Shown: positions 934-2,324, numbered from the whole stretch's first letter. The stretch is 63,319 nucleotides of DNA, filler included, from Octopus bimaculoides (GCF_001194135.2; 6 parts of 6 records of this genome joined end to end with filler, not necessarily neighbours in it), one strand, 5' to 3'. The notes: generated by a model not told the origin, from the sequence alone. Translations and numbers: made by a program.

Positions 934-1080
934 AGTGTCCGGAATCTACAACTATTTGCAACAGACAAATAGCATGTCCTGAAAACCTTGCATATCAAAT
1001 ATGTAAGGTGCCTTTCCTGGATGATGCCAAACTGGTATGCAATGACAGCCTACTATGGGAAGCACACTTTACCTGTCCAG
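934..1080 (+). CDS. Internal coding exon (147 nt, phase 1-1), Cys-rich extracellular module copy 1, partly sushi/CCP-like
   Basis: Acceptor tttttctttcag|AG, donor CCAG|gtaaaa. Translates (E)CPESTTICNRQIACPENLAYQICKVPFLDDAKLVCNDSLLWEAHFTCP(G). The paralog at 2178-2324 has identical length and splice phase. Confidence 0.85.
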
Positions 1081-1280
1081 GTAAAAGGAATCTCAATGCA
1101 TTATCATTGTTTTTGTTGGTATTATCTTTGCTTTTTTTTCTTGTTATTCTTTTTTTATCACTTTATAATGTTGGAAGAATTACATGAGTATTGATTGTTC
1201 ATTAATCCTGGTGGTTTGAGAATAATCGACTGGGAGTCATGTAGAAAGATAGCATTTGACCATTCTGACAAGTGGTGTGA

Positions 1281-1451
1281 ACAAGTGCCAGCAAGAAGAC
1301 GCTGGGCACAGGTGCCATCACGATTTCGCTTTCGCTTGCCCCAACAGGTCTTCACAAGCCAAGTTTAGTGGCCTGCATAGAAGCCAGTCCAGCGGCACTG
1401 GCAACGATCTCACTCGAATGTCTTTACACGTGCCACCGGCACAAGTGTCAG
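1281..1451 (-). mobile_element. RTE-type 3' UTR fragment with permuted block order
   Basis: Two blocks match 2960-3117 but lie in swapped order. Confidence 0.7.
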
Positions 1452-1530
1452 TCATAATAGACACTGTGATGATCATTAAAAGCTTAGGTGAAGCAATTAA
1501 GCTGTGAAATCATATATGTAGTGACCATAA

Positions 1531-1803
1531 CTAAGAACAATAGTCCAGGCGGCTGAGAACAAAGGTTCTCCTAAAGGTCAACATAGTTTCTTGGTTTCTT
1601 GTCTTGAAGGACCTCAGTATCCATCCTGCCAGTTGTCTGCACTTTGCTGCCATCTTGCTTATGTGCATATGAAATGATGGGTCGTTGCACATGCTTATCC
1701 CCAAATCTTTCACTACCTGAGACTCTGGGATTGTAGGGTCTTGTAAATGTAGATTGTACTGTATTTGTGAGTTGATAGTGCAGTGCTTACAATTTTCCAG
1801 CAT
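1531..1803 (-). mobile_element. CR1-group LINE ORF2 fragment (post-RT region)
   Basis: VKDLGISMCNDPSFHMHISKMAAKCRQLAGWILRSFKTR...VLSRLDYCS matches the KDLG...HI...GWILRxF...RLDYCS pattern of CR1-group ORF2. Confidence 0.8.
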
Positions 1804-1955
1804 TAAACTGCATGTTGTTTATTTCAGCCCACTTGTATATTGAGTTTAGGCCCCGCTGTAAGCTTCTAACACCCTCTTGGCTTTTTATTGTCTGTGATAA
1901 TTTTGTATCATCGGCATAGCTAGTGACAGTGGCTGTCTGAGTGACTGTGGGCATG

Positions 1956-1986
<31 letters not shown>

Positions 1987-2177
1987 NNNNNNNNNNNNNN
2001 NNNNNNNNNNNNNNNNNNNNNNNNNNNNNNNNNNNNNNNNNNNNNNNNNNNNNNNNNNNNNNNNNNNNNNNNNNNNNNNNNNNNNNATCAGAATTTTTTC
2101 CGATTCCGTTAATTTTGTTTGTTGTTTCACAGACATATATGTATGTATATATATATATATGAATATTTTTGTTTCAG

Positions 2178-2324
2178 AGTGTCCAGAAAATACAACTGTT
2201 TGCAACAGACGAATAACATGTCCTGAAAGGCAGTATTATCAAGAATGTAAGGTGCCTTTTAGGAACAATGGCAAATTGGTTTGCAGTGACAATCTGAAAT
2301 GGAAACCAAACTTTACCTGTCCAG
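2178..2324 (+). CDS. Internal coding exon (147 nt, phase 1-1), Cys-rich extracellular module copy 2
   Basis: Acceptor tatttttgtttcag|AG, donor CCAG|gtaaaa. Translates (E)CPENTTVCNRRITCPERQYYQECKVPFRNNGKLVCSDNLKWKPNFTCP(G). All six Cys and the Trp match copy 1; N-glycosylation sequons NTT and NFT. Confidence 0.85.

What the first reader, a model, noticed from the sequence alone, without database searches (positions are those of the whole stretch)
934..2324. Tandem 147-nt exon pair: fixed 6-Cys/Trp scaffold with rapidly diverged, charge-reversed surface
Seen: two exons 1244 bp apart with the same length and phase and C-x6-C-x5-C-x8-C-x11-C-x5-W-x5-C spacing. A hand count gives 33/147 nt differences; 18 of 48 whole codons change amino acid (28 nt changes) and only 5 change synonymously. 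No Cys or Trp is lost and there are no indels. Net charge moves from about -4 (7 acidic, 3 basic) to about +3 (5 acidic, 8 basic). Intron homology continues about 120 nt past the donors. Established: symmetric phase-1 exons typify shuffled extracellular modules, and the C...W...C end recalls sushi/CCP, but six Cys in 49 aa is not canonical CCP. Inference: an uncharacterised receptor module under diversifying selection, used either as tandem domains or as mutually exclusive exons (Dscam-like), possibly in recognition or immunity.
Basis: partly seen in the sequence, partly recalled or inferred. Interest (0 to 1): 0.8.

Follow-up and report, generated by a model that had tools for sequence, protein, structure and literature searches.

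The report
Two repeat exons of an octopus membrane-protein gene

Summary
The exons lie at 934-1080 and 2178-2324, each 147 nt with ag/gt borders. They differ at 33 nt, with 18 replacement and 5 silent codon changes. All six Cys and the Trp are kept, and net charge goes from -4 to +3. The N gap at 1987-2086 lies in the intron between them and touches neither frame.

The window comes from Octopus bimaculoides, from the gene of UniProt A0A0L8GVR5. A full HMMER scan found ten proteins, the eight named ones all cephalopod (Octopus, Argonauta, Sepia). They share one architecture: signal peptide, an N-terminal Cys module, one to four 49-aa modules, a membrane helix and a tail. The likely O. vulgaris orthologue joins three modules as ...FTCP-E-CPEN.... 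Splicing 1080 to 2178 predicts exactly that Glu codon, so tandem use is supported.

- dN/dS is 0.43-0.66, so diversifying selection is not shown.
- Nothing supports mutually exclusive splicing.
- There is no Pfam or PDB sequence match, Sushi and TNFR included.
- A confident AlphaFold model (pLDDT 92) has no significant Foldseek match.

The deposited model reads through donor 1 into a T-rich intron and gains a false hydrophobic tail. It is probably truncated.

The parts
922..933 (+). Polypyrimidine tract and acceptor (tttttctttcag) of module exon 1
   Evidence: Read directly from the sequence. The protein boundary K|CPEST in P0001 and P0002 falls here.
934..1080 (+). Module exon 1 (D1), phase 1-1, encoding (K)CPESTTICNRQIACPENLAYQICKVPFLDDAKLVCNDSLLWEAHFTCP(G/E). 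It carries an N-D-S sequon at 1041-1049.
   Evidence: Identical to residues 75-122 of A0A0L8GVR5. 71% identical to D1 of O. vulgaris CAI9732128.1.
1081..1221 (+). Start of the intron after exon 1: donor gtaaaa, then a T-rich stretch (51% T) that is conserved among the copies. In frame it reads GKRNLNALSLFLLVLSLLFFLVILFLSLYNVGRIT, with a stop at 1185-1187. This read-through forms the C-terminus of the deposited model.
   Evidence: there is no frame-specific constraint, other frames are equally hydrophobic, and a second frame is open for 37 codons.
1281..1451 (.). SINE-like repeat fragment inside the intron
   Evidence: Direct repeats D9 and D11 match 2963-3122 at 89-90%.
1531..1954 (-). LINE reverse-transcriptase remnant inside the intron (YADD motif)
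   Evidence: ORFs; weak RVT_1 hit, E = 0.009.
1987..2086 (.). Assembly gap, intronic, next to a (TA)n run
   Evidence: No reading frame crosses it.
2166..2177 (+). Polypyrimidine tract and acceptor (tttttgtttcag) of module exon 2
2178..2324 (+). Module exon 2 (D2), phase 1-1, encoding (E)CPENTTVCNRRITCPERQYYQECKVPFRNNGKLVCSDNLKWKPNFTCP(G). It carries an N-T-T sequon at 2189-2197.
   Evidence: 78% identical to D2 and 71% to D3 of CAI9732128.1. The junction G(1080)+AG(2178-2179) gives GAG = Glu, the residue found at the orthologue's module junctions.
2325..2465 (+). Start of the intron after exon 2: donor gtaaaa plus the conserved T-rich stretch. In frame it is open as far as the stop at 2432-2434.
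   Evidence: The +4 and -1 indels relative to copy 1 shift about 8 codons out of register.

Best explanation
The window is part of an Octopus bimaculoides gene for a single-pass (type I) membrane glycoprotein. The gene belongs to a family seen so far only in coleoid cephalopods.

**Family architecture.** Members have a signal peptide, an N-terminal 6-Cys module (W-x-Y-K-x-K-L-G-x-x-E-Y-C-C-x-C...P-F-C-x-C), one to four tandem copies of a 49-residue six-Cys/one-Trp module, a membrane helix, and a variable, low-complexity cytoplasmic tail.

**What the two exons are.** Each 49-residue module is one 147-nt exon bounded by phase-1 introns. Exons 934-1080 and 2178-2324 are the first and second modules. 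They are spliced to each other (G + AG = Glu) and lie side by side in the ectodomain.

**How the repeat arose (inferred).** A unit of about 350 nt was duplicated in tandem: acceptor, exon, and the first ~140 nt of the intron. This happened before O. bimaculoides and O. vulgaris separated. SINE and LINE insertions later pushed the copies about 1.2 kb apart.

**The module.** It is predicted with high confidence to be a compact, mostly beta domain of five short strands. It is presumably held by three disulfides, and joint loss of Cys3 and Cys4 in one relative suggests a C3-C4 bond. Residues between the Cys/Trp scaffold change almost as fast as the neighbouring intron.

**Function (inferred).** The most likely role is a cell-surface binding or recognition ectodomain. 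Module number is adjusted by exon duplication, and the module surfaces are weakly constrained. The ligand is unknown.

**The public model.** A0A0L8GVR5 stops in the intron after exon 1 and is most likely truncated. Its hydrophobic C-terminus is translated T-rich intron.
For: **Shown**
- Exon anatomy and splice motifs.
- The window encodes the last 84 residues of A0A0L8GVR5_OCTBM, the only hit in the word-indexed search.
- A full HMMER scan of 1.84 billion representatives finds 10 proteins at E <= 1e-3. All eight named ones are cephalopod: Octopus vulgaris, O. sinensis, O. bimaculoides, Argonauta hians and Sepia/Acanthosepion pharaonis.
- O. vulgaris CAI9732128.1 has the closest N-module (67%). 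It has three modules of exactly 49 aa joined ...FTCP|ECPEN..., followed by a membrane helix.
- O. bimaculoides A0A0L8H5C1 has four modules plus a membrane helix. O. sinensis XP_029655600.1 has two.
- Copy 1 groups with D1 of the orthologue and copy 2 with D2/D3.
- A cuttlefish-type genomic contig (L006) has the homologous module as one 153-nt exon with ag|GA...A|gtaaga, which is also phase 1-1. Its junction residues match the Sepia protein.
- A third octopus copy (L001) keeps the donor at the same base, with a better match (gtaaga).
- The tail is not coding-like. dN/dS in the tail frame is 0.6-0.8, no different from the two control frames (0.5 and 1.35). T is 48-51% of bases. Other frames are equally hydrophobic, and one is open for 37 codons. 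Copy 2 carries +4/-1 indels. The cuttlefish intron has no such ORF.
- The AlphaFold2 model of the module, built from a 19-sequence alignment, has pLDDT 92.1 and five strands.
- Both modules carry N-x-S/T sequons, and the model protein has an N-terminal signal-like helix.

**Inferred**
- Actual splicing in O. bimaculoides.
- Disulfide pairing.
- Function.
Against: - All family proteins are computer gene models ('hypothetical' or 'uncharacterized'). No transcript or junction read was available here.
- The only O. bimaculoides model for this gene does not splice at 1080.
- The frame after the donor is open in all three octopus copies and ends at the same aligned codon (TGA, TAA, TAA). One indel between copy 1 and L001 is in frame.
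- The intron start is as conserved as the exon, or more so. No explanation was established for this.
- No membrane-helix or tail exon resembling the orthologue's was found in the remaining 5.4 kb, which includes a 655-N gap.
Confidence: 0.8

Rival explanations
1. Each copy is a 3'-terminal coding exon that is not spliced at the 'donor'. Translation runs on for 35-36 codons into a hydrophobic membrane anchor (or GPI-type signal). The locus then encodes short anchored proteins with alternative last exons, or an intron-retention isoform alongside the long form.
For: - The deposited model A0A0L8GVR5 ends this way.
- The frame is open to the same aligned stop codon in copy 1, copy 2 and L001.
- The stretch of about 21 hydrophobic residues is followed by YNVGRIT or similar.
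- The L001 indel is 3 nt.
- The tail is more conserved than the exon.
Against: - T-richness alone explains both the open frame and the hydrophobicity, because other frames behave the same.
- There is no frame-specific constraint.
- Copy 2 has +4/-1 indels that scramble 8 codons.
- GT is kept at the same base in all copies and is improved in L001.
- Orthologue and paralogues splice here and have a separate, ordinary membrane helix.
- No conserved poly(A) signal follows the stops: the next one is at 1475 for copy 1 and 3457 for copy 2.
- No upstream exons for a second gene lie between the copies.
Confidence: 0.12
2. The two exons are mutually exclusive alternatives (Dscam-like). Each transcript carries one or the other, which gives receptor variants.
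For: - The exons have equal length and phase, so either one alone keeps the frame.
- The conserved intron starts could in principle act as selector elements.
Against: - The orthologue model contains D1, D2 and D3 together, and paralogues contain 2-4 modules in series.
- There are only two copies here.
- The conserved intron stretches show no stable RNA structure, with z-scores of 0.1-1.3.
- The modules have distinct orthologues, which fits fixed positions in a repeat array.
Confidence: 0.04
3. Copy 2 (or copy 1) is a dead duplicate: a pseudo-exon that is never included in mRNA.
For: No transcript evidence was available. The deposited model omits copy 2.
Against: - Both copies keep an open frame, all six Cys, the Trp and both splice motifs, despite 22% nucleotide divergence.
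- Copy 2 is 78% identical to the orthologue's D2, closer than copy 1 is to D1.
- dN/dS is below 1.
Confidence: 0.04

Closest known systems
Unnamed cephalopod membrane-protein family: O. vulgaris CAI9732128.1 (A0AA36FEY1), O. bimaculoides A0A0L8H5C1 and A0A0L8GVR5, O. sinensis XP_029655600.1, Argonauta hians GAB1601623.1, Acanthosepion pharaonis CAE1153323.1
   Same: They share the same 49-aa module with the same Cys/Trp spacing, the same N-terminal module, tandem arrays and a membrane helix. The window is the A0A0L8GVR5 gene itself.
   Different: Nothing differs in kind. The deposited O. bimaculoides model has one module and a read-through tail, whereas the DNA holds at least two module exons.
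Sushi / CCP / SCR module (Pfam PF00084)
   Same: Both are small beta-rich disulfide modules of extracellular proteins. Both are usually one phase-1/phase-1 exon, occur in tandem arrays, and end with a C-x5-W-x5-C-like motif (general knowledge of the family).
   Different: This module has six Cys rather than four, and is 49 rather than about 60 residues. There is no Pfam hit even at E = 10. CD55 appears in Foldseek only at E 3-4 with probability 0.06.
TNFR cysteine-rich domain (Pfam PF00020; PROSITE TNFR-Cys profile)
   Same: Both have six Cys in 40-50 residues and form tandem copies in the ectodomain of type I membrane receptors. UniProt's automatic name for paralogue A0A0L8H5C1 is 'TNFR-Cys domain-containing protein'.
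   Different: There is no TNFR_c6 hit for any family member. The spacing 6-5-8-11-11 lacks the C-x(0-2)-C-x(2-3)-C core of TNFR repeats (spacing recalled from memory). The predicted fold has five strands, and no TNFR structure appears among the Foldseek matches.
Pacifastin-type protease inhibitor domain (SGPI/SGTI; PDB 2xtt, 2vu8, 2f91)
   Same: These are the top Foldseek matches. They are small six-Cys beta domains.
   Different: The matches are not significant (E 0.95-1.8, TM 0.42-0.59 over 31-34 residues). The Cys spacing differs and there is no sequence match.
Dscam-type clusters of mutually exclusive exons
   Same: Both involve tandemly duplicated exons of equal length and phase that encode variant extracellular modules.
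   Different: There are two copies, not dozens. Relatives use the copies in series. No docking or selector structure was found.

Membership tests
Cephalopod N-module + 49-aa six-Cys module membrane-protein family (unnamed) | Module with C-x6-C-x5-C-x8-C-x11-C-x5-W-x5-C and a significant profile match | tested here: met
   In the family profile search, individual modules of the family proteins, including the window's own copy 1 (as P0001 residues 74-122), score 59-85 bits. The family scan gives E values from 9e-97 to 2e-5.
Cephalopod N-module + 49-aa six-Cys module membrane-protein family (unnamed) | Signal peptide and N-terminal CC-x-C...C...C-x-C module upstream in the same gene | tested here: met
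   P0001 (A0A0L8GVR5), whose last exon is window 934-1187, carries this module. It is 67% identical to CAI9732128.1. The encoding exons lie outside the window.
Cephalopod N-module + 49-aa six-Cys module membrane-protein family (unnamed) | Modules joined in series by phase-1 splicing | tested here: inconclusive
   The predicted junction codon GAG = E equals the orthologue's junction residue, and the phase is conserved in the cuttlefish contig. No transcript from this species was available.
Cephalopod N-module + 49-aa six-Cys module membrane-protein family (unnamed) | Downstream membrane helix and cytoplasmic tail | tested here: not met
   No exon in 2325-7735 resembles the orthologue's helix or tail. 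That stretch includes 655 N, and the gene may continue beyond the piece. A weak candidate lies at 5643-5678.
Sushi/CCP (PF00084) | Match to the Pfam profile; four-Cys I-III/II-IV pattern in about 60 aa | tested here: not met
   No hit at E <= 10 for the modules or at E <= 1 for eight family proteins. The module has six Cys in 49 aa.
Sushi/CCP (PF00084) | CCP beta-sandwich fold | tested here: not met
   Foldseek matches to CD55 and C1r CCP chains have E 3-6 and TM 0.23-0.35.
TNFR Cys-rich domain (PF00020) | Match to the TNFR_c6 profile | tested here: not met
   No hit. The PROSITE profile behind UniProt's automatic name could not be run here.
Dscam-like mutually exclusive exon cluster | Only one exon of the cluster per mRNA | not testable with these tools
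   This needs transcript data. The orthologue model with all modules in series argues against it.
Gene under diversifying selection | dN/dS significantly above 1 | tested here: not met
   Pairwise dN/dS is 0.66, 0.56 and 0.43. Without the scaffold codons it is 0.75, 0.64 and 0.48. dN relative to intron change is 1.0-1.5, with Fisher p >= 0.19. Site-wise tests were not possible with three sequences.

The most novel reading that the evidence does not exclude
The 49-residue module would be a new protein fold family confined to coleoid cephalopods. It would be used in a small, fast-evolving, tandemly clustered set of surface receptors whose surfaces are tuned by selection at a few sites. The unusually conserved, always-open T-rich intron starts would be a built-in switch: retaining the intron after any module exon would yield a shorter protein with its own membrane anchor. 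One gene would then give a nested series of receptors carrying one, two or three modules.
Probability: 0.1. Interest if true: 0.6.

Novelty: new member of a known kind. Interest (0 to 1): 0.3.

Why it matters
- **Annotation.** The public O. bimaculoides model A0A0L8GVR5 is probably truncated and ends in translated intron. At least one further module exon (2178-2324) belongs to the gene.
- **Protein families.** The module is absent from Pfam and has no sequence match to any solved structure. A high-confidence predicted fold has no significant structural neighbour. It would be a reasonable new domain entry and a modest addition to the list of cephalopod-specific surface proteins.
- **Exon evolution.** It is a clean textbook case of domain-number evolution by duplication of a phase-1 exon.
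- **Limits.** It does not open or settle a long-standing question. Function, ligand and expression are unknown.

Tried and rejected
- **Pfam on modules, tandem and eight family proteins.** Only noise.
- **PDB sequence searches.** Neither the single tandem query nor the family profile found anything.
- **Foldseek.** Nothing with E < 0.9 in either PDB or BFVD.
- **AlphaFold of full P0001 without an alignment.** The model was poor, pLDDT 52, and was not used.
- **Word-indexed protein search.** The tandem query returned only P0001, and the family profile returned nothing. This index evidently misses the family, so the third search was not spent.
- **Look-up of contigs encoding P0001.** Not on record.
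- **Literature searches.** Searches for accession numbers, LOC ids, SRR run numbers and general terms found no paper on the family.
- **Hydrophobic read-through as a real anchor.** Tested and largely rejected on composition, control frames, indels and the cuttlefish comparison.
- **RNA structure in the conserved intron starts.** None; z-scores were 0.14, 1.33 and 0.28.
- **Rfam.** Only sub-threshold microsatellite 'miRNA' hits.
- **Search for more module copies, N-module exons or the orthologue's helix and tail in the window.** None found.
- **Source species of the Logan contigs L001-L005.** It could not be determined, so L001 is used only as 'a third octopus-type copy'.

Full report
**1. The observation**

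The window was read in full. The two segments are at 934-1080 and 2178-2324. Each is 147 nt, follows a pyrimidine tract ending in cag, and precedes gtaaaa. Each reads as 2 bases + 48 codons + 1 base.

- 33 nucleotide differences and no indel.
- 18 replacement codons (28 nt) and 5 silent ones.
- Six Cys and one Trp at identical positions, with spacing C-x6-C-x5-C-x8-C-x11-C-x5-W-x5-C.
- Net charge of -4 for copy 1 and +3 for copy 2.

The repeat finder reports a single ungapped 242-nt pair (884-1125 / 2128-2369, 78%). The gapped alignment carries the homology to about 1221 / 2465. The similarity is far beyond chance, with tblastn E = 1.6e-30 inside the window.

**2. The gap**

The Ns at 1987-2086 lie in the spacer between the two exons. 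They sit directly after a (TA)n run and 91 nt before exon 2. No reading frame crosses them, so continuity 'in frame' is not an issue. Only the 1244-nt spacing is uncertain.

The spacer is mostly transposon debris. There is a SINE-like fragment at 1281-1451, matching 2963-3122 at 89-90%. There is also a LINE reverse-transcriptase remnant on the minus strand at 1531-1954, with a YADD motif and a weak RVT_1 hit. The original duplicated unit was therefore about 350 nt, and the copies were probably close together.

**3. What gene this is**

The word-indexed protein search returned one protein, UniProt A0A0L8GVR5 of Octopus bimaculoides (157 aa, uncharacterised). Its last 84 residues are encoded exactly by 934-1184. 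The window is therefore O. bimaculoides DNA.

That model does not splice at 1080. It reads on through GKRNLNALSLFLLVLSLLFFLVILFLSLYNVGRIT to a stop at 1185-1187. Copy 2 is open in the same way, up to a stop at 2432-2434.

**4. The family**

I scanned 1.84 billion representative proteins with a profile built from the model protein and copy 2. Ten proteins scored E <= 1e-3. All eight named ones are cephalopod. The other two are unnamed ORFs from sequencing-run assemblies.

| Protein | Species | Modules | Other features |
|---|---|---|---|
| CAI9732128.1 | O. vulgaris | 3 | membrane helix; neighbours CAI9732129-31 are family members |
| XP_029655600.1 | O. sinensis | 2 | |
| XP_036364299.1 | O. 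sinensis | 2 (first one partial) | partial model; long repeat-rich C-terminal part, no obvious membrane helix |
| A0A0L8H5C1 | O. bimaculoides | 4 | membrane helix |
| GAB1601604.1, GAB1601623.1 | Argonauta hians | 1 and 2 | GAB1601623.1 has a membrane helix |
| CAE1153323.1 | Acanthosepion pharaonis | 1 | membrane helix |

The sequences share one plan: signal peptide, an N-terminal Cys module, one to four 49-aa modules, a membrane helix, and a variable tail.

CAI9732128.1 has the N-module closest to this gene's (67% identity). Its modules are each exactly 49 aa and are joined ...FTCP-E-CPEN.... Copy 1 is closest to its D1 (71%). Copy 2 is closest to its D2 (78%) and D3 (71%). A neighbour-joining tree groups them accordingly.

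Two things follow:
- Relatives use the modules in series. Splicing 1080 to 2178 makes G+AG = GAG = Glu, which is the very residue at the orthologue's junctions.
- The D1/D2 duplication predates the split of the two octopus species, so the copies are old rather than rapidly diverged.

**5. Are the donors real?**

A cuttlefish-type genomic contig (L006) carries the homologous module as one 153-nt exon, bounded ag|GA ... A|gtaaga. This is again phase 1-1. The junction residues R and T predicted from the DNA match the Sepia protein. A third octopus-type copy (L001-L005, identical contigs from five runs) keeps GT at the same base, with a better donor, gtaaga. 'One module, one phase-1 exon' is therefore a family-wide and ancient feature.

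**6. The open, hydrophobic tail**

This was the main rival, because it is open in all three octopus copies and ends at the same aligned codon. The evidence against it is as follows:
- The stretch is 48-51% T.
- In copy 1 a second frame is also open for 37 codons.
- All frames translate to Phe/Leu/Ile-rich strings.
- dN/dS in the 'coding' frame is 0.6-0.8, indistinguishable from the control frames at 0.5 and 1.35.
- Copy 2 carries a +4 and a -1 indel that put about 8 codons out of register.
- No conserved poly(A) signal follows the stops.
- The cuttlefish intron has no such ORF.
- The relatives have a separate, ordinary membrane helix.

I conclude that the tail is intron and the deposited model is truncated. 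I leave about 12% for a genuine intron-retention or alternative-last-exon isoform.

**7. Selection**

| Pair | dN | dS | dN/dS | dN/dS without Cys/Trp codons |
|---|---|---|---|---|
| copy 1 vs copy 2 | 0.249 | 0.377 | 0.66 (Fisher p = 0.33) | 0.75 |
| copy 1 vs L001 | 0.295 | 0.524 | 0.56 | 0.64 |
| copy 2 vs L001 | 0.307 | 0.707 | 0.43 | 0.48 |

Replacement change in the non-scaffold codons runs at 1.0-1.5 times the change in the adjacent intron, which is not significant (p >= 0.19).

The surface is therefore weakly constrained, but positive selection is not demonstrated. The charge contrast is not conserved either: the orthologue's modules are +1, -1 and -1.

One pattern remains unexplained. 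The intron start is at least as conserved as the exon. A 34-nt piece at 1188-1221 is 33/34 identical to L001, although the exons differ by 27%. It has no stable RNA structure. A U-rich splicing enhancer for the weak gtaaaa donors, or local gene conversion, are possible explanations. Both are inference only.

**8. What the module is**

- No Pfam family matches the modules or any of eight family proteins. Sushi and TNFR_c6 were among the families that failed to match.
- No PDB sequence matches, whether the query is a single sequence or the family profile.
- AlphaFold2 with a 19-sequence module alignment gives a confident model: pLDDT 92.1, with strands at 5-8, 11-14, 23-26, 32-36 and 42-44.
- Foldseek finds nothing significant in PDB. 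The best matches are pacifastin-type inhibitors at E 0.95 and CD55 sushi at E about 3. BFVD also gives nothing.
- One relative (the second module of CAI9732129.1) lacks Cys3 and Cys4 together, which hints at a C3-C4 disulfide.
- Both modules here carry N-glycosylation sequons, which fits an extracellular location.

UniProt's automatic 'TNFR-Cys' name on a paralogue is not backed by any test I could run.

**9. Mechanism and verdict**

Most likely (0.8), these are two consecutive module exons of a cephalopod-specific type I membrane glycoprotein. They were produced by tandem duplication of a phase-1 exon and are used in series in the ectodomain. The probable role is binding or recognition, with an unknown ligand.

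The claims of selection, charge reversal, sushi and Dscam-like splicing are not supported.

The genes are already in databases as hypothetical proteins, but the module is undescribed as a family. I rate it a new member of a known kind (small disulfide-rich extracellular repeat modules), with modest interest.

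Noticed in passing
window 1-237 and 6190-6426: Two copies of a SINE-like element in inverted orientation are 98% complementary over 237 nt. They bracket both module exons, 5.9 kb apart, and the first arm is cut by the edge of the piece. Further copies or fragments lie at 2700-3120, 1281-1451 and 7380-7680. 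In a pre-mRNA such a pair would form a long duplex, which could be an RNA-editing substrate or an aid to back-splicing.
   Followed up: no
window 1188-1221 vs L001 305-338: The 34 nt just after the read-through stop (GTATTGATTGTTCATTAATCCTGGTGGTTT...) are 33/34 identical between copy 1 and the third copy L001, while the exons differ by 27%. Copy 2 does not share this stretch. The cause is unknown.
   Followed up: partly
window 5643-5678 (and upstream ORF from about 5579): This is a candidate 36-nt phase-1/phase-1 micro-exon: ttgtag|GT GTT GTA TAC TGG ATT TTG AAA CGA AGA AAA TCA G|gtcagt, reading G-VVYWILKRRKS. With the T-rich stretch before it, the frame reads IFCFSFLLVGVVYWILKRRKS, which looks like a membrane helix plus stop-transfer. 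It resembles the Argonauta relative (…SLYCKKWRKKRK) but not the O. vulgaris orthologue. It may be chance in T-rich sequence.
   Followed up: partly
window 4443-5097: This is a 655-N assembly gap downstream of exon 2. The O. vulgaris orthologue has a third module, and D2 and D3 differ more from each other (63% identity) than either does from copy 2. A third module exon could therefore be hidden here or have been lost.
   Followed up: no
window 3222-3635, minus strand: Remnant of a Tc1/mariner-type transposase (Pfam DDE_3, E = 2e-11).
   Followed up: yes
window 5794-5864 and 5924-5994: A 71-nt palindrome, 97% complementary with a 59-nt loop, ends at a 10-N gap (5995-6004). It is either a foldback element or an assembly artefact.
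   Followed up: no
P0006 (Argonauta hians GAB1601604.1): This relative has the N-module and one 49-aa module, followed by what looks like a multi-pass membrane region rather than a single helix. It is either a different architecture or a fused gene model.
   Followed up: no
O. vulgaris CAI9732128-CAI9732131: Four consecutive accession numbers on one 84-Mb chromosome are all family members. This suggests a tandem gene cluster.
   Followed up: no
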